From positions 124,001 through 188,000 of IMG/VR virus record IMGVR_UViG_3300032322_001765: 64,000 bases of DNA. One strand, 5' to 3'. The notes below the pieces were generated by a model. That model was not told the DNA's origin. It saw nothing but the letters and a program-made list of their open reading frames with translations, and made no database searches. Below, piece after piece: positions 28,398 to 64,000 of the stretch. The stretch's first letter is position 1; every line of letters starts with the position of its first letter. The translations under genes were made by a program, and so were the position numbers.

Positions 28398-28437
28398 TCA
28401 AATATTTATAGAATGATAATAGTCGATAAATATTTTA

Positions 28438-35302: not shown

Positions 35303-35334
35303 CGTAATATTTATTTCTTAATTTTAATAGGTTT

Positions 35335-49311: not shown

Positions 49312-49334
49312 TGACTATTTACTATAAATATTTC

Positions 49335-56232: not shown

Positions 56233-56268
56233 GACAATATTTATTAGAAAAAACGGGCAAATAAGTAT

Positions 56269-56297
56269 TTGACTATATAGATATCTTATTGTACAAT
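56269..56297 (+). promoter_or_regulatory. sigma70-type promoter upstream of the leader ORF and tRNA array
   Basis: TTGACT-17 nt-TACAAT. Confidence 0.65.
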
Positions 56298-56369
56298 GTG
56301 TACATTGAAAATGCGTAAAAAAGCTAGATAATTTAAGCTTTTATTATGCCAGGACTAAATAACTTTACT

Positions 56370-56510
56370 ATGATGAACTTTACTTGTAAAAATACGATGC
56401 TGCATGAAGGGCTATGGTCAGTTTTAGCCATAGAGTCTTTTGCGCCTGTATATCCAACAAGTATCCGTGGCACAAATGATAATCAAAGCGGCTACCGGGG
56501 AACGGAATAA
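56370..56510 (+). CDS. Putative leader peptide, 46 aa (MMNFTCKNTMLHEGLWSVLAIESFAPVYPTSIRGTNDNQSGYRGTE)
   Basis: Not in ORF track; TAAATA at 56356-56361; alternative in-frame ATG at 56346; terminator follows. Confidence 0.5.
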   Translation: MMNFTCKNTMLHEGLWSVLAIESFAPVYPTSIRGTNDNQSGYRGTE

Positions 56511-56537
56511 ACAAGTAACATTATAAAAGTTTATACG

Positions 56538-56570
56538 AACCCTGGAAATTTAAAATCTCCAGGGTTTTTT
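56538..56570 (+). terminator. Intrinsic terminator (candidate attenuator)
   Basis: AACCCTGGA...TCCAGGGTT stem followed by a T-run. Confidence 0.8.
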
Positions 56571-56589
56571 GTTGCAGGAATACAACACT

Positions 56590-56748
56590 ATGATTGACAA
56601 AATAACAGAAAATGATATAAAATTCGGTTCGCTTGATAACAAAAAGTGGTATGAAGAACATGTGTTATCAAAAGAACAACTAGATTTGTTAATAAAAAAC
56701 AAATTTGATAGGTATAAAAATTATCAAATAGACAAGGTTGATTGCTAA
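56590..56748 (+). CDS. Small hypothetical protein, 52 aa (MIDKITENDIKFGSLDNKKWYEEH...)
   Basis: AGGA upstream, open frame to TAA at 56748; not in ORF track. Confidence 0.4.
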   Translation: MIDKITENDIKFGSLDNKKWYEEHVLSKEQLDLLIKNKFDRYKNYQIDKVDC

Positions 56749-56901
56749 TTTTTATACAAGTGTTTAGAGAGAACGAGGCTCTTAGGTTCACTATAAAAAA
56801 TCTTTAACGGGCGGACAGTATACATGAAGTATATGGCGAAAACATATATAGTAAGACTACTGGTTGGAACGTCGATTCTAACATAATGCGAGATAACTCG
56901 C

Positions 56902-57005
56902 ATTATTCTAAAGCATACTCAGTGATATAGGGTACAGTCGGGATGCCGTAATGGATCCTTTTAGATGAGCGGTTCAACTCCGTTAATAGTATGTTTCAGA
57001 ATAAT
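56902..57005 (+). ncRNA. Conserved-stem hairpin element, copy 1, containing a tRNA T-arm
   Basis: ATTATTCTAAAGCATACT / AGTATGTTTCAGAATAAT arms; AGCGG-TTCAACT-CCGTT at 56968-56984. Confidence 0.5.
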
Positions 57006-57014
57006 AATTACAAT

Positions 57015-57090
57015 TGGGGATTCGCCAAGTTGGTAAGGCACCGGATTTTGATTCCGGCATTCGGTGGTTCGAGTCCATCATCCCCAGCCA
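57015..57090 (+). tRNA. tRNA-Gln(TTG)
   Basis: Cloverleaf; CCGGA-TTTTGAT-TCCGG; CCA. Confidence 0.95.
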
Positions 57091-57092
57091 TT

Positions 57093-57169
57093 GCCCCAAT
57101 AACTCAGTGGACTAGAGTACTGTGCTACGAACGCAGGAGTCGGAGGTTCGAATCCTTCTTGGGGTACCA
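57093..57169 (+). tRNA. tRNA-Arg(ACG)
   Basis: CTGTG-CTACGAA-CGCAG; CCA. Confidence 0.95.
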
Positions 57170-57229
57170 TTCTTGTTGACTAAATACGTTTGCTTGTTTA
57201 ATATGAGCGTTCTTATACAGGAGGTAAAC

Positions 57230-57301
57230 ATGTGGACTAAACCTACAGCACAGGATATGCGTTTTGGTTTTGAAATCACTATGTATATTGCAAATCGCTA
57301 A
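57230..57301 (+). CDS. pqqA: PQQ precursor peptide PqqA (MWTKPTAQDMRFGFEITMYIANR)
   Basis: 23 aa; W.KP...D.RFGFE.TMY..NR with the ExxxY motif; AGGAGG RBS; hairpin after the stop. Confidence 0.93.
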   Translation: MWTKPTAQDMRFGFEITMYIANR

Positions 57302-57319
57302 TATACAACATTGATGGGC

Positions 57320-57346
57320 AAAAAGGTAGCTATGCTACCTTTTTTT
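57320..57346 (+). terminator. Intrinsic terminator after pqqA (possibly bidirectional)
   Basis: AAAAAGGTAGC-TAT-GCTACCTTTTTTT. Confidence 0.85.
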
Positions 57347-57348
57347 AC

Positions 57349-57424
57349 GGTAGAGTAGCATAGCGGCTAATGCGCCACCTTCATACGGTGTTTATCGTCA
57401 GTTCGAGTCTGACCTCTACTACCA
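57349..57424 (+). tRNA. tRNA with CAT anticodon (elongator Met or Ile2)
   Basis: CACC-TTCATAC-GGTG; paired 1:72; CCA. Confidence 0.85.
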
Positions 57425-57438
57425 ATAAAGGAAATATT

Positions 57439-57591
57439 ATGCCAATGTATGAAACTACTGTTAGAACGCCGAGCGGCGAAGAAAAGAAAAGAATTTATGC
57501 GGATACACCGCAAGAGGCTAAAAAACTTTTTGAACAATTGTATGGTGGGCCTAGAGCAGTTCCATATATACCAAAAATAGTACCAAGTTAG
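57439..57591 (+). CDS. Small hypothetical protein, 50 aa (MPMYETTVRTPSG...)
   Basis: AAGGA RBS; true start lies after the tRNA. Confidence 0.65.
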   Translation: MPMYETTVRTPSGEEKKRIYADTPQEAKKLFEQLYGGPRAVPYIPKIVPS

Positions 57592-57664
57592 GGGGATTAG
57601 TTAAATGGGATAACAACGGCTTTGCAAGCCGTGATTAACAGTTCGATTCTGTTATCCTCCACCA
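57591..57664 (+). tRNA. tRNA-Ala(TGC)
   Basis: G3:U70 pair; ACGGC-TTTGCAA-GCCGT; CCA. Confidence 0.95.
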
Positions 57665-57675
57665 AAACATTCAAT

Positions 57676-57752
57676 GGTGATGGTAGCTCAGTTGGTAGAG
57701 TCCCGGATTGTGATTCCGGTCGTCGTGGGTTCGAGCCCCATCCTTCACCCCA
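57676..57752 (+). tRNA. tRNA-His(GTG)
   Basis: G-1 and C73; CCGGA-TTGTGAT-TCCGG. Confidence 0.95.
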
Positions 57753-57755
57753 AAT

Positions 57756-57833
57756 ACCCTGATGGCGAAATTGGTAGACGCACCAGTTTAAGGTACTGGA
57801 TTGTTGAGAGTTCGAGTCTCTCTCAGGGCACCA
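57756..57833 (+). tRNA. tRNA-Leu(AAG), atypical
   Basis: Leu-type D-arm (GGCGAAATTGGTAGACGC); CCAGT-TTAAGGT-ACTGG; short variable region; A1-C72 mismatch. Confidence 0.75.
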
Positions 57834-57835
57834 AT

Positions 57836-57911
57836 GCCGTTCAAGCTAACCAAGTGGAAGCGTCTGTCTGAAGAACAGAATGGCCTGGAGCGTTACCAGG
57901 GGTCGGCACCA
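57836..57911 (+). tRNA. tRNA-Phe(GAA), atypical T-loop
   Basis: TCTGT-CTGAAGA-ACAGA; T-arm CCTGG-AGCGTTA-CCAGG; CCA. Confidence 0.8.
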
Positions 57912-57915
57912 ATTT

Positions 57916-57944
57916 TTGACAAATATTAAATTATTTGTTATACT
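57916..57944 (+). promoter_or_regulatory. sigma70-type promoter
   Basis: TTGACA-17 nt-TATACT. Confidence 0.75.
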
Positions 57945-57948
57945 TGAT

Positions 57949-58023
57949 GAGTCCTTAGTCTAATGGATAAGATACTGCATTCCGATTGCATTGATGCAGG
58001 TTCGATTCCTGCAGGACTTACCA
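57949..58023 (+). tRNA. tRNA-Arg(CCG)
   Basis: TGCA-TTCCGAT-TGCA; A20 in D-loop; CCA. Confidence 0.88.
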
Positions 58024-58055
58024 AAAGTAAATACTATTTTATATAGGAGATTAAA

Positions 58056-58616
58056 ATGTCTGTCTTAGCTTTGGATATCACAGGAATCCCTAGACAATGG
58101 GTTTCAAACGATATTGCAATCACTTACCATGCAAAAGAGATGGTAGCATGGAGTATTGGTGAAATTGTTGCACGTTATCGTGGTGGCATTCAAAATAATG
58201 GCAAAATGAGTTATCTTGAAACTCCTAGTATTATTGCCATTAAAGGACATGGTTTTGATCCTAGCAAACATGGCAAAGTTGCACTTACTAATAAAACATT
58301 GTTTGGGCGTGACCGTCATGTATGTGCATACTGCGGCGGACATTTTTCGAATTCAAACAACTTAAGTCGTGACCATATTTTACCTAAAAGCAGAGGTGGT
58401 GCAAACAATTGGATGAATGTGGTTACTGCATGTACTCCATGCAATAACAAGAAAGACAACAAAACATTGAAAGAGGCACGAATGGAATTGCTTTATGTTC
58501 CCTATGAGCCAAATTTCTTTGAAGCAATGATTTTGCAAAATAGAAATATTCTCGCTGATCAAATGGAATACTTAATGACAGGTGTACCAAAACATAGCAG
58601 AATTTTGTTATCATAA
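58056..58616 (+). CDS. HNH endonuclease (McrA-like)
   Basis: RDRHVCAYCG, SRDHILPKSRGG, WMNVVTACTPCNNKK; AGGAG RBS. Confidence 0.92.
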   Translation: MSVLALDITGIPRQWVSNDIAITYHAKEMVAWSIGEIVARYRGGIQNNGKMSYLETPSIIAIKGHGFDPSKHGKVALTNKTLFGRDRHVCAYCGGHFSNSNNLSRDHILPKSRGGANNWMNVVTACTPCNNKKDNKTLKEARMELLYVPYEPNFFEAMILQNRNILADQMEYLMTGVPKHSRILLS

Positions 58617-58624
58617 TAAAAACA

Positions 58625-58653
58625 TTGACATAAAATGTTTTGTGTGATATGAT
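58625..58653 (+). promoter_or_regulatory. sigma70-type promoter
   Basis: TTGACA-17 nt-TATGAT. Confidence 0.7.
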
Positions 58654-58672
58654 TGCGTTTAAATAGTTTTAT

Positions 58673-58747
58673 GCTGGCGTGGCTCAACGGTAGAGCAACG
58701 GATTTGTAATCCGTAGGTTGAGGGTTCGATTCCTTTCGCCAGCACCA
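58673..58747 (+). tRNA. tRNA-Thr(TGT)
   Basis: ACGGA-TTTGTAA-TCCGT; CCA. Confidence 0.95.
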
Positions 58748-58753
58748 TTTTAT

Positions 58754-58829
58754 TGTCTAGTAGCTCAGTCGGTAGAGCAGGTGACTGTTAATCACCCTGT
58801 CGTAGGTTCGATCCCTACCTAGACAGCCA
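58754..58829 (+). tRNA. tRNA-Asn(GTT)
   Basis: GGTGA-CTGTTAA-TCACC; G73; CCA. Confidence 0.95.
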
Positions 58830-58853
58830 AACTTCTTGTATTATAGGTATATT

Positions 58854-59048
58854 ATGTTAGTTACTGAAGCACAAGGTTACAAACTTTTCTGTGAAACACA
58901 AAAAATTGATTTCCCGCCGGACACCTATTATGTTCGTATTTTTACCAAATATGAATTTGCTAAGAACTCTGATGCGGAGCAAACTAAGATTGAACTTTTT
59001 CTAACTAAAAGTGAATTAGACAATCTTAGACAAATGCTTACTGTCTAA
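58854..59048 (+). CDS. Small hypothetical protein (MLVTEAQGYKLFC...)
   Basis: AGGT RBS, ATG at 58854; fills the inter-tRNA gap. Confidence 0.55.
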   Translation: MLVTEAQGYKLFCETQKIDFPPDTYYVRIFTKYEFAKNSDAEQTKIELFLTKSELDNLRQMLTV

Positions 59049-59055
59049 TTAATTT

Positions 59056-59130
59056 CTGGCGTTCGTATAAGGGATAATACTACAGACTTCTAATCTGTAA
59101 ATCCAGGTTCGAGTCCTGGACGCCGGACCA
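59056..59130 (+). tRNA. tRNA-Arg(TCT)
   Basis: ACAGA-CTTCTAA-TCTGT; CCA. Confidence 0.95.
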
Positions 59131-59159
59131 AATTATCAAACTAGCAACAAAAATAATTG

Positions 59160-59188
59160 TTGACGATAAATCCTATTTGATGTATAAT
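59160..59188 (+). promoter_or_regulatory. sigma70-type promoter
   Basis: TTGACG-17 nt-TATAAT. Confidence 0.75.
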
Positions 59189-59233
59189 TCTTTTTATCGT
59201 AGTTAATATCTTTAACAATTTAATAACATTTAG

Positions 59234-59309
59234 GCACCCATCGTCTAGAGGCCTAGGACATTGCCCTTTCAAGGCAGTAACACGGGTTCGAATCCCGTTG
59301 GGTGTACCA
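59234..59309 (+). tRNA. tRNA-Glu(TTC)
   Basis: TTGCC-CTTTCAA-GGCAG; CCA. Confidence 0.95.
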
Positions 59310-59369
59310 GTTAATGGTATAACTAACTGTGATACAAGCACAATATGCTTGGTAGATTATACCATACTT

Positions 59370-59446
59370 GCCCACTTAGCTCATTCGGTTAGAGCATCGT
59401 CTTGATAAGGCGGGGGTGCTTGGTTCGATTCCAAGAGTGGGCACCA
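59370..59446 (+). tRNA. tRNA-Ile(GAT)
   Basis: TCGTC-TTGATAA-GGCGG; CCA. Confidence 0.93.
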
Positions 59447-59527
59447 TATTGAAGCACATTATTAGTGACGCTGGGAAGGACAAGATTCAGCGGTAAATAA
59501 ATCCTTCATTAGTGTGTTTCAATATGG
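59444..59527 (+). ncRNA. Conserved-stem hairpin element, copy 2
   Basis: CCATATTGAAGCACATT / AGTGTGTTTCAATATGG, 17 bp with two G-U pairs; begins at the CCA of tRNA-Ile. Confidence 0.55.
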
Positions 59528-59556
59528 TTGACAATAAATCAGTTTGCTGTTAAACT
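59528..59556 (+). promoter_or_regulatory. sigma70-type promoter upstream of the putative ncRNA
   Basis: TTGACA-17 nt-TAAACT. Confidence 0.65.
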
Positions 59557-59569
59557 AGCGGCAAATAAA

Positions 59570-59763
59570 GATTCCGGTTACTACTTTCCTGAAAGTAGCG
59601 TGTGGCGACGATAATTGACCCGGTGGCAGCAAACCGTTAGCGAGGTAACTCCTCAGGCACTGCTAGGCAGAATCCCAACTGCACACAGACACGAGAATAA
59701 ACGGGATGGACAGGGTAACAACTCTGCTAAGGGGCGATGCCTGGAAAACACGTAGCCTTAGCA
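59570..59763 (+). ncRNA. Unrecognised structured ncRNA, copy A
   Basis: GC-rich, non-coding; shares GATGGACAGGGTAACAACTC and the flanking hairpin layout with 60644-60843. Confidence 0.6.
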
Positions 59764-59889
59764 ATATTAGTTTTGCAGTTTGTAAGCACAGAAGCCGGCG
59801 CGAGGCATTATGTAACCAAAGCAATAAACAGTAATCACGTGTAAAGCTGTTGAGCGAGGCATATAGTATAAACTGCAAAACTAATATTG
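59762..59889 (+). repeat. Perfect 20-bp inverted repeat enclosing an 88-nt insert
   Basis: CAATATTAGTTTTGCAGTTT (59762-59781) / AAACTGCAAAACTAATATTG (59870-59889). Confidence 0.85.
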
Positions 59890-59965
59890 GCTTCATAGTT
59901 CAGTTGGTTAGAACGCCGCCCTGTCACGGCGGAGGTCAGGGGTTCGAGTCCCCTTGAGGTCGCCA
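59889..59965 (+). tRNA. tRNA-Asp(GTC)
   Basis: CCGCC-CTGTCAC-GGCGG; G73; CCA. Confidence 0.95.
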
Positions 59966-60047
59966 AACATAGGGTAAACTTCTACTTGCACTTAATTTGA
60001 ACTTAAAGTAAAATATAGGTTCTTTAGTTAAGTCATTGGAGAACAGA

Positions 60048-60251
60048 ATGAATTTGAAATTGAAAGCAGCATTGTATACCTTTCTATATGCATTAACAGG
60101 ATTAGGTGTAGGATTTGTAGTATCACAACTGCCTACTTGGACAGTAGTAACACTTGTGTGTATTTTTGGAATTTGTCTAGCATATATTCTTATACATACA
60201 GGACTAAAATACGATGAAGCAGTAAAAGAAATAAGTAAGAAGTACGAATAA
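60048..60251 (+). CDS. Small two-TM membrane protein
   Basis: GGAG RBS, ATG at 60048; two hydrophobic stretches. Confidence 0.6.
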   Translation: MNLKLKAALYTFLYALTGLGVGFVVSQLPTWTVVTLVCIFGICLAYILIHTGLKYDEAVKEISKKYE

Positions 60252-60259
60252 TGTAGTTA

Positions 60260-60350
60260 GGAGCGTTGGCCGAGTGGTCGAAGGCAGTGGTTTGCTAAAC
60301 CATCGTACATCAAAAATGTACCATTAGTTCGAATCTAATACGCTCCGCCA
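60260..60350 (+). tRNA. tRNA-Ser(GCT)
   Basis: GTGGT-TTGCTAA-ACCAT; long variable arm; G73. Confidence 0.95.
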
Positions 60351-60377
60351 GTTTTCATATTTTATTTAGGAAAGAAA

Positions 60378-60557
60378 ATGAAATATCTTAATTTTGTATT
60401 ACCCGTTATAATCACACTACTTTCAATAATTGGAATTATTGCTAGTTATGGTGCAGGTAACGATTCTGCACTTAGTGCATATGTTGTAGCATTATCAGGT
60501 TGGATGGTAATCGCAACGGATGAAGTTATTAAATTTATTGATAGTCGAAGAAAATAA
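60378..60557 (+). CDS. Small two-TM membrane protein, 59 aa (MKYLNFVLPVIITLLSIIGIIASYG...)
   Basis: AGGA RBS; just under the ORF-track cutoff. Confidence 0.6.
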   Translation: MKYLNFVLPVIITLLSIIGIIASYGAGNDSALSAYVVALSGWMVIATDEVIKFIDSRRK

Positions 60558-60563
60558 ATTTAT

Positions 60564-60641
60564 GCAACGGTGGCAGAGAGGCCCAATGCAAGAGTCTGCA
60601 AAACTCTAAAGCCGTCAGTTCGAATCTGACCCGTTGCTCCA
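60564..60641 (+). tRNA. tRNA-Cys(GCA)
   Basis: AGAGT-CTGCAAA-ACTCT; U73; CCA. Confidence 0.95.
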
Positions 60642-60643
60642 AG

Positions 60644-60843
60644 TATCCCGCAGGCCCTTCTGCGCTATGAAAGGGGGTATATTGGCTTCACCATAACGCC
60701 AGGGCTCTTACGTTGATAGCCTCAAAGCCCGCTTGACATGGGTGATAGAAAAAACGTAGGTGGGTATCACACCTTGCCAGAAGTAAATGTGATGGACAGG
60801 GTAACAACTCAGTAAGGGGCTTATGGGAATAAGTAGCCTTACA
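60644..60843 (+). ncRNA. Unrecognised structured ncRNA, copy B
   Basis: GATGGACAGGGTAACAACTC at 60791-60810, followed by a GTAAGG...CCTTAC hairpin. Confidence 0.6.
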
Positions 60844-60867
60844 CTTTATACTATAGGAGATCCTGTT

Positions 60868-60906
60868 ATGGATAGTGACAAGAGTGACAAGATAATGCGG
60901 GCATAG
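60868..60906 (+). CDS. Putative 12-aa mini-ORF (MDSDKSDKIMRA) overlapping the 5' end of tRNA-Lys
   Basis: AGGAG at normal spacing before the ATG; stop codon falls inside the tRNA. Confidence 0.35.
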   Translation: MDSDKSDKIMRA

Positions 60907-60972
60907 CTCAGTCGGTAGAGCAGTAGACTTTTAATCTATTGGTCGTGGGTTCGAATCCCCCTGCCCGTACCA
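60897..60972 (+). tRNA. tRNA-Lys(TTT)
   Basis: GTAGA-CTTTTAA-TCTAT; CCA. Confidence 0.95.
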
Positions 60973-61050
60973 TATAAAAACACATTCGCTTATATTTTAA
61001 CGGCTTGCAAGGCACGGGCGTATAAGAGTATTGAGTGTGTTTCTATATGG
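60970..61050 (+). ncRNA. Conserved-stem hairpin element, copy 3
   Basis: CCATATAAAAACACATTC / GAGTGTGTTTCTATATGG; begins at the CCA of tRNA-Lys. Confidence 0.55.
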
Positions 61051-61056
61051 TTTATT

Positions 61057-61141
61057 GGGGATGCGGCTAAGTTAGAGAGTGGCGGCGGACTGTAAATCCG
61101 TTCTTTCGGGTGAGTAGGTGCGAATCCTTCCATCCCCACCA
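61057..61141 (+). tRNA. tRNA-Tyr(GTA), atypical D/T loops
   Basis: GCGGA-CTGTAAA-TCCGT; variable arm; T-loop TGCGAAT; CCA. Confidence 0.85.
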
Positions 61142-61147
61142 ATTAAT

Positions 61148-61221
61148 TCCGGTGTAGTATAATGGCAGTGCGACGGTCTCCAAAACCGTTAGTGGGAGTT
61201 CGATTCTCTCCACCGGAGCCA
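61148..61221 (+). tRNA. tRNA-Trp(CCA)
   Basis: ACGGT-CTCCAAA-ACCGT; G73. Confidence 0.95.
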
Positions 61222-61222
61222 G

Positions 61223-61444
61223 TTATTTAGTGAATCGTCTAATATGTGTAGATATAGGAGTATTATATTGTTCTGTACCGCGATCACCGCCTACTGTTAA
61301 ACGTAAGTTTACATCAACGGTTTTTGCGTAATAGTTTACATAATTGGCAATTTTACTACTTGTTGTTCTAATTAGACAAATACCGGCATTATTACAAACT
61401 ATGTAGGTAGTTATTCCGAATTCGTCTTTGTCTATGAATAGCAT
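61223..61444 (-). CDS. Small hypothetical protein antisense to the tRNA array (MLFIDKDEFG...)
   Basis: Fills the gap between tRNA-Trp and the next promoter; start uncertain (61444 or 61513). Confidence 0.45.
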   Translation of the reverse strand: MLFIDKDEFGITTYIVCNNAGICLIRTTSSKIANYVNYYAKTVDVNLRLTVGGDRGTEQYNTPISTHIRRFTK

Positions 61445-61524
61445 AACATATTTATTAATATTTGGGCAACTAATAGTTGCATTATTAATTTGTTTGATGT
61501 ATAATCTATACATAAGTTAGAAAT

Positions 61525-61601
61525 GCCTCTGTAGCTCAATCGGTCAGAGCAGCGGACTCATAATCCGTTGGTTAGGGGTTCGAGTCCCTTCGGAGGCACC
61601 A
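61525..61601 (+). tRNA. tRNA with CAT anticodon (Ile2 or elongator Met)
   Basis: GCGGA-CTCATAA-TCCGT; G1-C72; CCA. Confidence 0.9.
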
Positions 61602-61609
61602 GGTATTAT

Positions 61610-61683
61610 GCGGGATTAGTTTAATGGTAAAACGAAAGCCTTCCAAGCTCTAGTTATCAGTTCGATTCTGATATCCCGCTCCA
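61610..61683 (+). tRNA. tRNA-Gly(TCC)
   Basis: GCGGGAT/ATCCCGC acceptor; CTTCCAA loop; U73. Confidence 0.93.
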
Positions 61684-61692
61684 AGTTAGAAT

Positions 61693-61776
61693 GCCCGGGT
61701 GGTGAAATGGTAGACACAAAGGACTTAAAATCCTTCGCCGCAAGGCGTGCCGGTTCGAGTCCGGCTTCGGGTACCA
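61693..61776 (+). tRNA. tRNA-Leu(TAA)
   Basis: AAGGA-CTTAAAA-TCCTT; variable arm CGCC-GCAA-GGCG. Confidence 0.95.
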
Positions 61777-61784
61777 AGTAACAT

Positions 61785-61867
61785 GCGCATATGGCGAAAT
61801 TGGTAGACGCGCCAGATTTAGGTTCTGGTCTCAACGGGTGGGGGTTCGAGTCCCTCTATGCGCACCA
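61785..61867 (+). tRNA. tRNA-Leu(TAG)
   Basis: CCAGA-TTTAGGT-TCTGG; variable arm; CCA. Confidence 0.95.
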
Positions 61868-61900
61868 CTGTTCTCTTTTATAAAGATAAATAATTGTACT

Positions 61901-62074
61901 ATGGCACAATTAAAAATCTTCATTAACGACAAACTATACAAAACAGTACCATTAGATACTGAAAAATATGAGCCTTCTTGGTATTGGCCTCAAATTAAGG
62001 CTGATAAAGAAGCCGGTTTACTAAATTCTTTTAACATTGAAGAATCAATGAAAGTAGAATTTAGAAAAATATAA
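61901..62074 (+). CDS. Small hypothetical protein (MAQLKIFINDKLYK...)
   Basis: TAAATA at 61887-61892, ATG at 61901. Confidence 0.6.
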   Translation: MAQLKIFINDKLYKTVPLDTEKYEPSWYWPQIKADKEAGLLNSFNIEESMKVEFRKI

Positions 62075-62152
62075 ACCATAATAGTTTGTATACTTTCAAT
62101 ATTGCAATGATATGCTCACGCATATCAAAAAAGCAAGCCTATTTTTTTAGCT

Positions 62153-62160
62153 TATAAATA
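62153..62160 (+). promoter_or_regulatory. T4-like late promoter TATAAATA upstream of the initiator-like tRNA
   Basis: Exact motif 4 nt before the 5' extension stem. Confidence 0.6.
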
Positions 62161-62178
62161 AGTCGTAGGACATTAAGA

Positions 62179-62251
62179 CGCGGGTTAGGGAAGAGGTCAT
62201 CCCGTTAGGCTCATAACCTGAAGATCGTTGGTTCAAATCCAGCACCCGCAT
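62179..62251 (+). tRNA. Initiator-like tRNA-fMet(CAT), no encoded CCA
   Basis: C1-A72 mismatch, purine11:pyrimidine24, TTAGG-CTCATAA-CCTGA, TTCAAAT T-loop. Confidence 0.8.
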
Positions 62252-62269
62252 CTTAGTGTCTTACAATAA

Positions 62270-62348
62270 CCGGGTGTAGCTTAGTCTGGCTTAAAGCGCC
62301 TGCTTTGGGAGCAGGAGATCGTGAGTTCGAATCCCACTTCCCGGACCA
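62270..62348 (+). tRNA. tRNA-Pro(TGG)
   Basis: CCTGC-TTTGGGA-GCAGG; C1-G72, A73; CCA. Confidence 0.92.
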
Positions 62349-62367
62349 ATTCTTTTTAAGGTGATAT

Positions 62368-62505
62368 ATGGCTAAGCAAGTTGGAGTAAAAGAACGTAAG
62401 AAGGTAGTCAAATTAACTTGTCAGGGAGGAAGTAAACCCAAAACAAGTACTATGAATAAGGATTTAAAAAGAAGTTACAAGAAGTATAGAGGACAAGGTA
62501 AATAG
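62368..62505 (+). CDS. Small very basic protein, 45 aa, ending KRSYKKYRGQGK
   Basis: AAGGTG RBS; MAKQVGVKERKKVVKLTCQGGSKPKTSTMNKDLKRSYKKYRGQGK; not in ORF track. Confidence 0.7.
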   Translation: MAKQVGVKERKKVVKLTCQGGSKPKTSTMNKDLKRSYKKYRGQGK

Positions 62506-62579
62506 CATCGTTAGTTCAGCGGTAGAATCCCTGCCTTACAAGCAGGTTGTCGTTGGTTCGAATCCAGCACGATGCACCA
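62505..62579 (+). tRNA. tRNA-Val(TAC)
   Basis: CCTGC-CTTACAA-GCAGG; CCA. Confidence 0.95.
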
Positions 62580-62585
62580 AGTATT

Positions 62586-62660
62586 GCGGGTGTAATTCAG
62601 GGGTAGAATGTTTGCTTGCCAAGCAAAATGTCAGGAGTTCGAATCTCCTCACCCGCTCCA
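62586..62660 (+). tRNA. tRNA-Gly(GCC)
   Basis: TTTGC-TTGCCAA-GCAAA; U73; CCA. Confidence 0.95.
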
Positions 62661-62676
62661 ATTTTATATAATTTTT

Positions 62677-63917
62677 ATGGCACATCAACAACAATTTGAT
62701 TTTGTACAAAGAGTAAAGAATCGCTATCCAATAAATTTTTTTCAGAAAAAAGTTTTAGAAATTGGTAGCTTAAACATTAATGGCACAATAAGAGATTTTT
62801 TCAACTATTGTGATTATTTGGGAGTTGATGTAGGACAAGGTCCATGCGTCGATATAGTTTGTGAAGGTCAAAATGTAGATCATCCCGACAACACTTATGA
62901 CACAGTTGCAAGTTGTGAATGTTTTGAACACAACCCTCATTGGGTAGAAACTTTTCAAAATATGTATCGTATGACTAAGCCGGGTGGTTTAGTTTTTATG
63001 AGTTGTGCAACTACAGGTAGACCTGAACATGGTACAACACGTACTAGTCCTAGTGATAGTCCGTTAACAATTGGTATAGGTTGGGATTACTATAAAAATT
63101 TAACTGAACAAGATTTTAGAGATAACTTTAACATTGATGAAATGTTCAGTGAATATAAATTTGAAGTTGGTACATCACATCCTGATTTATATTTTTATGG
63201 TGTTAAAAAAACAAGTGATGTAATTGATTTTAGAAAATACTTTACTGAAAAGTATTACGACAGTAATTGGTTAAAAACTGCAAAAGAAACTTATGACAAT
63301 AACGATCCTTACCCGCATCTTGTCATAGATGATTTTTTACCAGTTGACGTAATGGAAAAAGTTTTAAATTCTTTCCCTCAACCCGGCGACTTAGATTGGT
63401 GGGAATTCAAGAATGATAACGAAATAAAATTAGGCAGTAGAAAAGAAATTCAATTACCGCAAGTAACAAGAAATGTATGTGCAGAATTAAATTCTGGCTA
63501 TGTGTTAGATTGGTTAGAGTATTTAACCAGTGTACCTGGGCTTATTGCTGATACAAGATTGTTTGGTGGTGGGTTGCATCAAATTGTGCGTGGTGGAAAA
63601 TTAAACATCCATGTAGATTTTAATATTGAACCACATACAAAATTACGTAGGCGACTTAATGTTCTAATCTATCTTAACAAAGATTGGAAAGAAGAATACG
63701 AAGGTTATTTAGAATTGTGGGACAAAACAAAAACACAATGTGTAAAAAAGATAGCGCCCGTTTTTAATCGTTGTGTAATTTTTAATACTAATGATACTTC
63801 ATGGCATGGGCATCCTACTCCATTAAATACGCCCGAACATATTACAAGAAAAAGTTTAGCCATGTATTATTACTCTGTCGATACAGAGAACGTAAAAGTT
63901 CATTCAACCATTTATTA

Positions 63918-63918
<1 letters not shown>
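62677..63918 (+). CDS. Class I methyltransferase fused to a 2OG-Fe(II) oxygenase
   Basis: True start MAHQQQ at 62677; VLEIGSLNING, ECFEH; PYPHLVIDDFL, GGLH, LNIHVDFN, RRLN..IYLN, SWHG..RKS. Confidence 0.88.

Positions 63919-64000
<82 letters not shown>

What the first reader, a model, noticed from the sequence alone, without database searches (positions are those of the whole stretch)
56269..56570. Candidate all-amino-acid sensing attenuator at the head of the tRNA array
Seen: promoter(s), then a 46-codon ORF (56370-56510) that contains all 20 amino acids and 37 different sense codons, including GC-rich ones (CGG, GCG, GCC, GGG, ACG, CTG) unusual in this AT-rich DNA, then a strong terminator 27 nt after the stop. 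CCGGGG in the last codons (56495-56500) can pair with the terminator 5' arm CCCTGG (56540-56545). The downstream array has tRNAs for all 20 amino acids. Known: classic attenuators couple ribosome stalling to antitermination, but for one amino acid. Inference: a ribosome that finishes the ORF masks the antiterminator, while loss of any tRNA (for example by a host anticodon nuclease) stalls it and allows read-through into the phage tRNAs. Caveats: the alternative helix is only 6 bp, and internal promoters exist further down the array.
Basis: partly seen in the sequence, partly recalled or inferred. Interest (0 to 1): 0.8.

Follow-up and report, generated by a model that had tools for sequence, protein, structure and literature searches.

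The report
Complete-alphabet leader peptide before phage tRNAs
A 46-codon gene in front of a large phage's tRNA genes recurs in over a hundred related uncultured phages, almost always contains all 20 amino acids, and is wired to a transcription stop signal, so it probably lets the phage sense whether protein synthesis is working.

Summary
The sequence features are real. The ORF at 56370-56510 has 46 codons, 37 distinct codons and all 20 amino acids. A terminator starts 27 nt after the stop. Only the claim that the array has tRNAs for all 20 amino acids fails: no tRNA-Phe was found.

The unit of promoter, ORF and terminator recurs in 35 fetched loci, always upstream of a tRNA array wherever at least 600 nt of downstream sequence was held. 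It is translated, because invariant residues change only at third codon positions.

Of 116 distinct family peptides (42-51 aa), 98 contain all 20 amino acids. Tree-aware simulation expects about 31, and random sampling about 2%. Rare residues relocate rather than disappear, and are almost never in the last six codons.

The antiterminator is not 6 bp. It is a 14-21 bp hairpin that includes the stop codon. A second, 23-29 bp long-range helix pairs the ribosome-binding region with the same terminator arm.

Best reading: a ribosome-mediated attenuator that terminates only when translation starts and finishes on time. This is mechanistically like the mycobacterial whiB7 leader, but selected for a complete amino-acid set.

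Complications are a conserved promoter just after the terminator, an unexplained invariant peptide core, and no experimental data.

The parts
56269..56297 (+). Promoter P1 (sigma-70 type, TTGACT-17-TACAAT)
   Evidence: Found by the scan. TTGAC and the -10 element align across homologous loci, with consensus GTTGACA-17-TATACT.
56313..56349 (+). 5'UTR hairpin
   Evidence: Present in the minimum-free-energy folds. A hairpin at the same place occurs in most homologues with different sequences, for example GUGCAAA/UUUGCAC against GUACAAA/UUUGUAC.
56349..56362 (+). Near-invariant motif CCAGGACTAAATAA: a Shine-Dalgarno-like AGGA 13 nt before the ATG, and the 5' strand of the long-range antiterminator
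   Evidence: Near-invariant in 28 sequences and retained in four divergent loci. It is unpaired in every 5'UTR fold. It pairs with the terminator 5' arm in 17 of 32 truncated-leader folds. C-G changes to U-A together in L036/L037.
56348..56388 (+). 5' strand of the long-range 'panhandle' (ribosome-binding motif, ATG and first six codons)
   Evidence: Complementary over 26 bp to 56510-56546 (dG -22.9, z -5.9). The same pairing has 23-29 bp in 30 of 32 sequences (z below -3), with lineage-specific sequences.
56370..56510 (+). Leader ORF1: 46 codons, all 20 amino acids, 37 distinct codons
   Evidence: Translation is inferred from third-position-only change at invariant residues and a preserved frame. 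Of 116 distinct relatives, 98 have all 20 amino acids.
56412..56433 (+). Internal hairpin (CTATGGT...GCCATAG), a possible RNA polymerase pause hairpin
   Evidence: A hairpin forms here in all 28 sequences (-6.6 to -11.4 kcal/mol), with U-A/A-U exchange. The Trp TGG and Ala GCC codons in it never vary. The pausing role is inference.
56436..56480 (+). Codons for the conserved peptide core (S-F-A-P-V-Y-P-T-S-I-R-G-T-N-D)
   Evidence: In columns with an invariant residue, all 9 extra nucleotide states are at third codon positions. AlphaFold2 gives no confident fold. Function is unexplained.
56495..56512 (+). Antiterminator 5' strand (seg1): CCGGGG, the last codons and the stop codon
   Evidence: It pairs with seg2 in all 27 distinct sequences, and the stop codon is fully paired in 27 of 27. 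The CCGGGG nucleotides are kept although the reading frame across them differs between lineages.
56529..56545 (+). Antiterminator 3' strand (seg2): GTTTAT..CG..CCCTGG, overlapping the terminator 5' arm
   Evidence: The TTTAT(C) box just upstream of the terminator is conserved non-coding sequence that pairs with the stop-codon region.
56510..56546 (+). 3' strand of the long-range panhandle (from the stop codon to the terminator 5' arm)
56538..56570 (+). Intrinsic terminator (9-bp stem, 11-nt loop, T6 tract)
   Evidence: The consensus fold has 10 pairs, with G-C/A-U exchanges. Mean dG is -16.7 kcal/mol over 27 sequences.
56594..56623 (+). Promoter P2 (TTGACA-18-TAAAAT)
   Evidence: TTGACA-17/18-TA(G/C)AAT lies 15-25 nt after the terminator in 25 of 28 loci scanned, whatever the frame of ORF2.
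56590..56748 (+). ORF2: conserved 48-58 aa helical protein whose ATG lies 25-43 nt upstream of the predicted P2 start site
   Evidence: The substitution pattern is coding-like. AlphaFold2 gives pLDDT 76 and a long helix. No Pfam or PHROGs family matches.
56762..57014 (+). Conserved structured RNA ('element X') between ORF2 and the first tRNA
   Evidence: 19 of 30 predicted pairs show compensatory changes in 8 sequences. No Rfam match. It directly follows the ORF1 terminator in L036, L075 and L078.
57015..64000 (+). tRNA array: 26 complete tRNAs for 19 amino acids, plus tRNA-Ser(UGA) cut by the window end

Best explanation
The element is a ribosome-mediated transcription attenuator that reports whether a complete round of translation succeeds.

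Proposed mechanism:
1. Promoter P1 makes a leader RNA carrying a 46-codon ORF.
2. The 5' arm of the terminator has three mutually exclusive partners:
   a. the terminator's own 3' arm;
   b. the last codons and stop codon of the ORF, forming a short-range antiterminator of 14-21 bp;
   c. the ribosome-binding motif, start codon and first codons, forming a long-range antiterminator of 23-29 bp.
3. A ribosome at the start site blocks partner (c). A ribosome reaching the last codons or the stop blocks partner (b).
4. The terminator therefore forms only if translation has both started and reached the end by the time RNA polymerase transcribes the terminator.
5. A delay at any codon leaves partner (b) free, and transcription reads through. 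Because the ORF holds every amino acid at least once, placed upstream of the last six codons, shortage of any charged tRNA would cause such a delay.
6. Read-through RNA is the only RNA predicted to encode the small protein ORF2. In lineages without promoter P2 at the usual place, it also runs on towards the structured RNA and the first tRNAs.

Shown here (by computation only): conservation, translation, selection for the complete amino-acid set, and the three competing pairings and their geometry.

Inferred: ribosome stalling, the direction of the switch, the physiological trigger (starvation, or host enzymes that destroy tRNAs), and the benefit of read-through.
For: Conservation and position:
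- The unit P1-ORF-terminator was found in 35 loci. Every locus with at least 600 nt of downstream sequence has same-strand tRNAs 260-1540 nt downstream.
- This holds in L078, where the upstream genes differ.

Translation:
- The frame and the stop are preserved, and indels come in threes.
- At invariant residues all 9 nucleotide variants are at third positions.

Complete amino-acid set:
- 23 of 26 peptides, and then 98 of 116, have all 20 amino acids.
- Expectations are 1.5-1.8% for random sampling with family composition, 33 of 116 for column shuffles (maximum 47 in 2000), and 31 ± 12 for tree-aware simulation (maximum 72 in 200).
- Residues lost from their usual column reappear elsewhere: Cys P = 5e-4, His 1e-7, Asp 4e-9, Gln 2e-6.

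Codon diversity:
- It exceeds expectation in all 32 loci (mean z +2.2).

Geometry:
- About 3 of 700 single-copy residues lie in the last six codons.
- The set is complete with a median of 7 codons left, against 4.0 after shuffling.
- The completing codon lies 8-9 nt before the antiterminator strand in 17 of 32 loci and at least 7 nt before it in 28 of 32. This matches a ribosome's leading edge.

Structures:
- The short antiterminator is the minimum-energy fold in 27 of 27 sequences. Its dG is -14.4 to -22.3, against a terminator mean of -16.7; z is -2.8 to -6.4; the stop codon is always paired.
- CCGGGG is kept across a frame difference.
- The long-range helix occurs in 30 of 32 sequences.
- In truncated leaders the terminator arm is always paired, to the ORF end in 15 and to the 5'UTR motif in 17.
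- With a ribosome modelled at the stop codon, the terminator forms in 32 of 32.

Precedent:
- In the whiB7 leader a single codon suffices to sense one amino acid, and loss of the start codon raises read-through (PMC10274678).
- ORF2's ATG lies upstream of the predicted P2 start site.
Against: - There is no experimental or transcript evidence.
- A consensus promoter (P2) sits 15-25 nt after the terminator in 25 of 28 loci scanned, and more promoters lie inside the array. The tRNAs therefore do not depend on read-through in most lineages.
- The invariant peptide core is not needed by a pure codon-sampling sensor.
- Covariation in the short antiterminator is modest, with 1 of 8 consensus pairs showing double changes. 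The evidence there is conservation plus per-sequence energetics.
- In full-length minimum-energy folds the terminator wins even with a ribosome modelled at codon 20 (29 of 32). The switch must therefore be kinetic, which folding energies cannot show.
- Part of the codon diversity is forced by the RNA structures, for example the G+C-rich codons in seg1 and the hairpin.
- 18 of 116 members lack one to three amino acids.
- In L071, L075 and L078 the completing codon is only 4-5 nt from seg1.
Confidence: 0.6

Rival explanations
1. A nascent-peptide (arrest-type) leader. In this view the invariant core F-x-P-x-Y-P-T-S-I-R-G acts inside the ribosome exit tunnel, alone or with a small molecule. It pauses the ribosome about 8-10 codons before the stop, which frees the antiterminator. 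The complete amino-acid set is secondary or serves another purpose.
For: - The core is under strict amino-acid-level selection and has no predicted fold.
- It ends just where a ribosome would still leave seg1 unpaired.
- Known leaders of this type (SecM, TnaC, SpeFL) combine a conserved peptide with RNA rearrangement. This comparison rests on established knowledge. The resemblance to the SecM motif is recalled from memory, not tested.
Against: - It does not explain why all 20 amino acids are kept, why rare residues relocate, or why codon diversity is raised.
- No arrest motif could be tested.
- The two readings are compatible, so this may be an added layer rather than a rival.
Confidence: 0.15
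2. An ordinary stand-alone small gene. P1, ORF1 and the terminator form a self-contained unit making a 46-residue peptide with its own, unknown function. The terminator simply insulates it from P2. The complementarities serve mRNA stability or silence the finished transcript.
For: - A strong promoter and a strong terminator flank the ORF, and a second consensus promoter follows.
- The peptide core is highly conserved.
- In full-length folds the terminator and a start-region/post-stop helix coexist.
Against: - The complete amino-acid set, its positional bias and the residue relocations have no explanation under this view.
- Two separate conserved helices specifically sequester the terminator's 5' arm.
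- CCGGGG is conserved as RNA, independent of reading frame.
- In five loci the usual post-terminator promoter is missing. In four of them (L036, L037, L075, L078) none was seen before the first tRNA.
- ORF2's ATG is upstream of the predicted P2 start site.
- AlphaFold2 finds no fold.
Confidence: 0.12
3. A non-coding structured RNA in which the open frame is incidental.
For: - Nucleotide conservation extends outside the ORF.
- Several helices are conserved.
- The region folds better than shuffles (z -3.05).
Against: - The frame is open in every homologue, with start and stop conserved and indels in threes.
- Variation at invariant residues is only at third positions.
- No Rfam family matches. 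The best hit is His_leader at 22 bits against a threshold of 49.
Confidence: 0.02

Closest known systems
whiB7 5' leader uORF attenuator of mycobacteria (PMC10274678)
   Same: A short translated upstream ORF is followed by an antiterminator/terminator choice. Stalling at a codon whose amino acid is scarce gives read-through. Which amino acids are sensed is set by the ORF's composition, and a single codon is enough. Loss of the start codon raises read-through. The M. smegmatis uORF encodes 19 of 20 amino acids.
   Different: The whiB7 uORF varies in length and sequence and is enriched in Ala. A complete set is not reported as conserved: the M. tuberculosis uORF lacks several amino acids. It controls a transcription factor in a bacterium. 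Here the set of 20 is itself maintained by selection in a 42-51 codon ORF, a peptide core is invariant, there are two antiterminators, the carrier is a phage, and the downstream genes are a small ORF, a structured RNA and tRNAs. No sequence relationship was found or expected.
Leader-peptide attenuators of amino-acid operons (trpL, hisL, pheL, leuL, thrL, and the multivalent ilv leaders)
   Same: They share a promoter-proximal short ORF, an intrinsic terminator, and an antiterminator whose 5' strand lies at the end of the ORF so that ribosome position decides the outcome. The stop codon lies inside or next to that strand. The ilv leaders sense three amino acids.
   Different: Those leaders use runs of codons for the cognate amino acid and control its biosynthesis. 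Here there are no runs, every amino acid appears at least once, and no biosynthetic genes follow. The Rfam leader models do not match (His_leader 22 bits against a threshold of 49).
Nascent-peptide arrest leaders (SecM, TnaC, SpeFL, ErmCL)
   Same: A short ORF with a peptide segment conserved at the amino-acid level, placed so that a paused ribosome would remodel the downstream RNA.
   Different: No known arrest motif was identified and arrest is untested. Those peptides are not selected to contain all amino acids.
T-box riboswitches
   Same: They couple the tRNA charging state to read-through of a terminator upstream of translation-related genes.
   Different: T-boxes bind uncharged tRNA directly and have no ORF. 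No T-box match was found here.

Membership tests
Leader-peptide transcription attenuators (trp/his/phe/leu/thr/ilv class) | Short translated ORF in the 5' leader of the transcript | tested here: met
   The 46-codon ORF lies about 66 nt downstream of the predicted P1 transcription start. Its frame is conserved and its substitutions are coding-type.
Leader-peptide transcription attenuators (trp/his/phe/leu/thr/ilv class) | Intrinsic terminator between the leader ORF and the downstream genes | tested here: met
   A 9-11 bp G+C-rich stem plus a T tract, conserved and with compensatory changes.
Leader-peptide transcription attenuators (trp/his/phe/leu/thr/ilv class) | An antiterminator that excludes the terminator and is masked by a ribosome at the end of the ORF | tested here: met
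   Shown by prediction only. A hairpin including the last codons and the stop occurs in 27 of 27 sequences. With a ribosome modelled at the stop, the terminator forms in 32 of 32.
Leader-peptide transcription attenuators (trp/his/phe/leu/thr/ilv class) | A run or enrichment of codons for the cognate amino acid(s) | tested here: not met
   There are no runs. All 20 amino acids are present, with about 7 of them in single copy.
Leader-peptide transcription attenuators (trp/his/phe/leu/thr/ilv class) | Downstream genes make the sensed amino acid | tested here: not met
   Downstream lie ORF2, a structured RNA and tRNAs.
Leader-peptide transcription attenuators (trp/his/phe/leu/thr/ilv class) | Match to a curated leader RNA model (Rfam) | tested here: not met
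   The best match is His_leader at 22 bits, E = 0.37, against a threshold of 49.
uORF-stalling translation-stress attenuators (whiB7-leader type) | uORF followed by an antiterminator/terminator choice, with sensing set by the uORF's composition | tested here: met
   The architecture is met. The composition covers all 20 amino acids in 98 of 116 members. The response itself was not tested.
uORF-stalling translation-stress attenuators (whiB7-leader type) | Read-through rises when uORF translation is slowed or abolished | not testable with these tools
   Predicted from the two antiterminators. Reporter assays are needed.
uORF-stalling translation-stress attenuators (whiB7-leader type) | Controls a stress-response regulator | tested here: inconclusive
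   ORF2 is a conserved small helical protein of unknown function.
Nascent-peptide arrest leaders (SecM/TnaC/SpeFL) | Peptide motif conserved at the amino-acid level | tested here: met
   The core S-F-x-P-x-Y-P-T-S-I-R-G is invariant, with synonymous changes only.
Nascent-peptide arrest leaders (SecM/TnaC/SpeFL) | Ribosome arrest at a defined codon | not testable with these tools
   No ribosome or toeprint data are available. The geometry is compatible.
T-box riboswitch | Specifier loop and T-box sequence recognised by the Rfam model | tested here: not met
   No T-box hit at E up to 10 in 56255-57020.

The most novel reading that the evidence does not exclude
A phage-encoded sensor of the whole translation cycle. 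The leader checks initiation, the supply of all 20 charged tRNAs, and arrival at the stop codon. When the host's translation apparatus is failing, for example after tRNA cleavage by a defence nuclease or during starvation, the leader switches on a rescue programme made up of ORF2, the structured RNA and extra tRNA transcription. Selection for a complete amino-acid 'alphabet' in a leader peptide would be a new design principle for attenuators.
Probability: 0.4. Interest if true: 0.92.

Novelty: new variant of a known kind. Interest (0 to 1): 0.85.

Why it matters
Why phages carry tRNA arrays, and how they deploy them, is a long-standing question. Recent work links phage tRNAs to escape from host defences that destroy tRNAs (PMC10264068, PMC11555353). 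Regulation of the arrays is essentially unknown.

This element gives a concrete, testable regulatory device at the head of the array in a large group of uncultured big phages. The group comprises 103 protein clusters at 90% identity, on contigs of up to about 350 kb.

It also shows something not described before, as far as the searches here could tell. This is a short ORF in which the presence of every amino acid is itself the conserved character. Such an ORF would make a leader peptide a general gauge of translation rather than a gauge of one amino acid.

The element is small (about 300 nt) and uses sigma-70-type promoters and an intrinsic terminator, so it should be testable in a laboratory strain.

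Tried and rejected
- Known RNA families: Rfam found nothing at gathering or relaxed thresholds. The only weak hit was His_leader at 22 bits.
- Known protein families: Pfam and PHROGs gave nothing for ORF1 or ORF2. ESM Atlas gave no lead, with scores of 0.74 or below.
- Cultured relatives: none in the phage record collection by DNA or by tblastn.
- Bacterial genomes: no copy in the species-representative genomes, so it is not a prophage feature.
- Non-coding RNA reading: rejected on codon-position and frame evidence.
- T-box reading: rejected.
- Alignment-wide covariation for the short antiterminator: weak because both strands are nearly invariant. I relied instead on per-sequence folding, divergent members and the frame-independent motif.
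- Full-length thermodynamic folding with a modelled stalled ribosome: it did not flip to the antiterminator. Equilibrium folding cannot settle a kinetic switch.
- Structure prediction: ORF1 is unfolded and low-confidence. ORF2 is a plain helix, too simple for a meaningful fold search.
- Literature: six searches found no description of this element.
- The motif ATAAATATT is not over-represented overall (9 matches against 5.7 expected).
Full report
**What is at the site**

The window is an AT-rich (34% G+C) stretch of a large uncultured phage. It is identical to the IMG/VR contig of 220,867 bp. There is no close relative among deposited phage genomes.

On the + strand, in order:
- Promoter P1 (TTGACT-17-TACAAT) at 56269-56297.
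- A 5'UTR hairpin at 56313-56349.
- The motif CCAGGACTAAATAA at 56349-56362.
- An ORF at 56370-56510.
- A terminator at 56538-56570.

The ORF has 46 sense codons, 37 different codons and all 20 amino acids. In this phage's own genes only 2.1-2.4% of 46-residue windows hold all 20 amino acids. None of 14,066 windows reaches 37 distinct codons (mean 26.9, maximum 35).

The claim that the array encodes tRNAs for all 20 amino acids does not hold. The 26 complete tRNAs in the window cover 19 amino acids. The tRNA cut by the window end is tRNA-Ser(UGA), and the next 5.7 kb add only a tmRNA. No tRNA-Phe was found.

**The unit is conserved and sits at the head of tRNA arrays**

- Back-translated searches found the ORF in 8 further IMG/VR contigs and 23 metagenome contigs.
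- A profile search of the protein collection found 103 clusters, all unnamed.
- Four divergent members were fetched with their flanks.
- Every locus with at least 600 nt of downstream sequence has same-strand tRNAs 260-1540 nt after the stop. This includes L078, whose upstream genes differ.
- P1, the motif, the ORF and the terminator all align.
- The family is absent from species-representative bacterial genomes.

**The ORF is translated**

- The frame is open in every copy, with ATG and stop aligned and indels in multiples of three.
- In the columns whose residue never changes (S, F, P, Y, P, T, S, I, R, G), all nine extra nucleotide states are at third positions.
- This rules out a purely non-coding RNA.
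- AlphaFold2 finds no fold (pLDDT 57.7, pTM 0.18).

**The complete amino-acid set is itself selected**

- Among the 26 distinct peptides from fetched loci, 23 have all 20 amino acids and three lack exactly one.
- With the protein hits added there are 116 distinct full-length peptides of 42-51 residues. Of these, 98 (84%) are complete and 14 lack one.

Expected values against the 98 observed:

| Model | Expected complete |
|---|---|
| Random draws with the family's composition | 1.5-1.8% |
| Shuffling within alignment columns | 33 of 116 (maximum 47 in 2000) |
| Simulation along the family tree, with site-specific rates and residue pools | 31 ± 12 (maximum 72 in 200) |

The smaller set, started from a complete ancestor, gave P of 0.003 or less.

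Low-copy residues relocate rather than vanish. When Cys, His, Asp, Gln, Phe or Lys is missing from its usual column, it is found elsewhere far more often than when it is present there (Cys 5 of 12 against 4 of 104; His 16 of 19 against 19 of 97). These counts are not phylogenetically independent, and small alignment shifts may inflate the Asp and Gln figures.

Codon diversity also exceeds what the peptide and the phage's codon usage predict, in all 32 loci (mean z +2.2). Part of that excess is forced by the RNA structures.

*Short antiterminator.* The strand CC(C)GGGG plus the last codons and the stop codon (56495-56512) pairs with TTTAT..CCCTGG (56529-56545). The second strand overlaps the terminator's 5' arm.
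- In all 27 distinct sequences this hairpin is the minimum-energy fold of the RNA lacking the terminator's 3' arm.
- Its dG is -14.4 to -22.3 kcal/mol (mean -19.9), against a terminator mean of -16.7. The z score is -2.8 to -6.4. All three stop-codon bases are paired.
- The CCGGGG nucleotides are kept although the frame across them differs. The window and L039 read C-CGG-GGA (Arg-Gly), while most others read CCG-GGG (Pro-Gly). The constraint is therefore on the RNA.
- Divergent members keep the principle with other sequences: 17 pairs in L036, a perfect 10-bp helix displaced 15 nt in L075, and TGATAA with TTATCA in L077.
- Alignment-wide covariation is modest because both strands are nearly invariant.

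*Long-range antiterminator.* The whole initiation region (56348-56388: motif, ATG and first six codons) is complementary to the whole stretch from the stop codon to the terminator's 5' arm (56510-56546).
- It has 23-29 bp in 30 of 32 sequences, with z of -3.2 to -8.1 and lineage-specific sequences.

*Combined behaviour.*
- In minimum-energy folds of the leader truncated before the terminator's 3' arm, the 5' arm is never free. It pairs with the ORF end in 15 sequences and with CCAGGACU in 17.
- With a ribosome modelled on the stop codon, neither alternative forms and the terminator forms in 32 of 32.
- An internal hairpin at 56412-56433 is present in all copies. It could be a polymerase pause site, which is inference.

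**The geometry fits ribosome masking**

- Single-copy residues are almost absent from the last six codons (about 3 of 700).
- The set of 20 is complete with a median of seven codons to spare, against 4.0 when residue order is shuffled.
- The first base of the completing codon lies 8-9 nt upstream of the antiterminator strand in 17 of 32 loci, and at least 7 nt upstream in 28 of 32.
- That is about where the leading edge of a ribosome stalled with that codon in its A site would end. This figure comes from established footprint geometry and was not measured here.
- The exceptions are L071, L075 and L078 (4-5 nt).

**What read-through reaches**

- In 25 of 28 loci scanned, a consensus promoter P2 (window 56594-56623) follows the terminator by 15-25 nt.
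- A conserved ORF2 of 48-58 residues (window 56590-56748) starts 25-43 nt upstream of P2's predicted start site. The start codon is placed differently relative to the -35 box in different lineages.
- ORF2 evolves like a coding sequence and is predicted helical.
- P2 transcripts should therefore lack ORF2's start codon, and only read-through RNA from P1 could encode it.
- After ORF2 comes a conserved structured RNA, with 19 of 30 pairs showing compensatory changes and no Rfam family. The tRNAs follow.
- L036, L037, L075, L078 and L059 lack P2 and ORF2 at the usual place. In the first four the terminator is followed directly by the structured RNA and the tRNAs, with no promoter seen. L059 has a consensus promoter about 500 nt further on. 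In L059 and L078 the T tract is shortened.

**Interpretation**

The best-supported reading is a ribosome-mediated attenuator that terminates only when translation both starts and reaches the end on time. It reads through when any step fails.

The closest known system is the whiB7 leader of mycobacteria. There the uORF's composition decides which amino-acid shortages are sensed, one codon suffices, and loss of the start codon raises read-through. The M. smegmatis uORF happens to encode 19 of the 20 amino acids (PMC10274678).

What is new here:
- The complete set is maintained by selection.
- There are two ribosome-masked antiterminators.
- A peptide core is invariant.
- The element sits at a phage tRNA array.

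The link to host tRNA-cleaving defences (PMC10264068, PMC11555353) is plausible context, not evidence.

**Limits**

All of this is computational. The direction and size of the switch, the trigger, the role of the peptide core, and the functions of ORF2 and the structured RNA are unknown.

Noticed in passing
window 56762-57014 (also L036:6215-6400, L075:3235-3457, L078:3195-3490): A conserved structured RNA lies just upstream of the first tRNA, with core AACGGGCGGACAGTA..GGATGAA. In only 8 sequences, 19 of 30 predicted pairs show compensatory changes. No Rfam family matches. In loci without ORF2 and P2 it directly follows the ORF1 terminator.
   Followed up: partly
window 56590-56748 and 56594-56623: A conserved small helical protein (ORF2, motif W-x3-H-V-L-T-K-E-Q-L-A-Q-L-I-x-N-K-I-D-R-A-K) has its start codon embedded in a consensus promoter. 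Transcripts from that promoter should therefore lack the start codon.
   Followed up: partly
L100:8323-8716 (same contig, about 1.9 kb beyond the window end): The phage encodes a permuted tmRNA with tag peptide ANAANDEVYALAA just after the tRNA array. No tRNA-Phe was found in the array.
   Followed up: no
window 28401-28409(-), 28426-28434(+), 35306-35314(-), 49324-49332(+), 56236-56244(-): The motif ATAAATATT sits 1-5 nt before the start codons of genes that head operons. It resembles a T4-type late promoter (TATAAATA) and would give nearly leaderless mRNAs. In addition, 33 of 46 genes have no Shine-Dalgarno-like motif. The motif is not over-represented overall (9 matches against 5.7 expected).
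   Followed up: partly
window 56955-56990: A T-arm-like sequence (GCGGTTCAACTCCGT) lies inside the structured RNA, shortly before tRNA-Gln, and is shared with L035. It may be a degenerate or tRNA-like module that ARAGORN does not call.
   Followed up: no
window 29235-56232 (- strand mostly): A long cluster of radical-SAM, methyltransferase and glycosyltransferase-like genes ends at the 533-residue gene that diverges from P1. The same gene and the radical-SAM neighbours precede ORF1 in L075-L077.
   Followed up: partly
window 58056-58616 and 62608-63918: Two protein genes lie inside the tRNA array: an HNH endonuclease gene and a fused methyltransferase/2OG-Fe(II) oxygenase gene.
   Followed up: no
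window 63965-64000; L079-L121: The last 36 nt of the window (the 3' half of tRNA-Ser(UGA)) occur identically in 43 IMG/VR contigs. This points to a large group of related tRNA-rich phages.
   Followed up: no
L059:2690-2710, L078:3190-3205: In two loci that lack the post-terminator promoter at its usual place, the terminator's T tract is shortened to TTT(T)CCAG. This would make termination leakier.
   Followed up: no
L076:5576-5659, L075:3621-3694: Weak tRNA-Sec-like Rfam hits (41 and 30 bits, threshold 47) occur inside related arrays.
   Followed up: no
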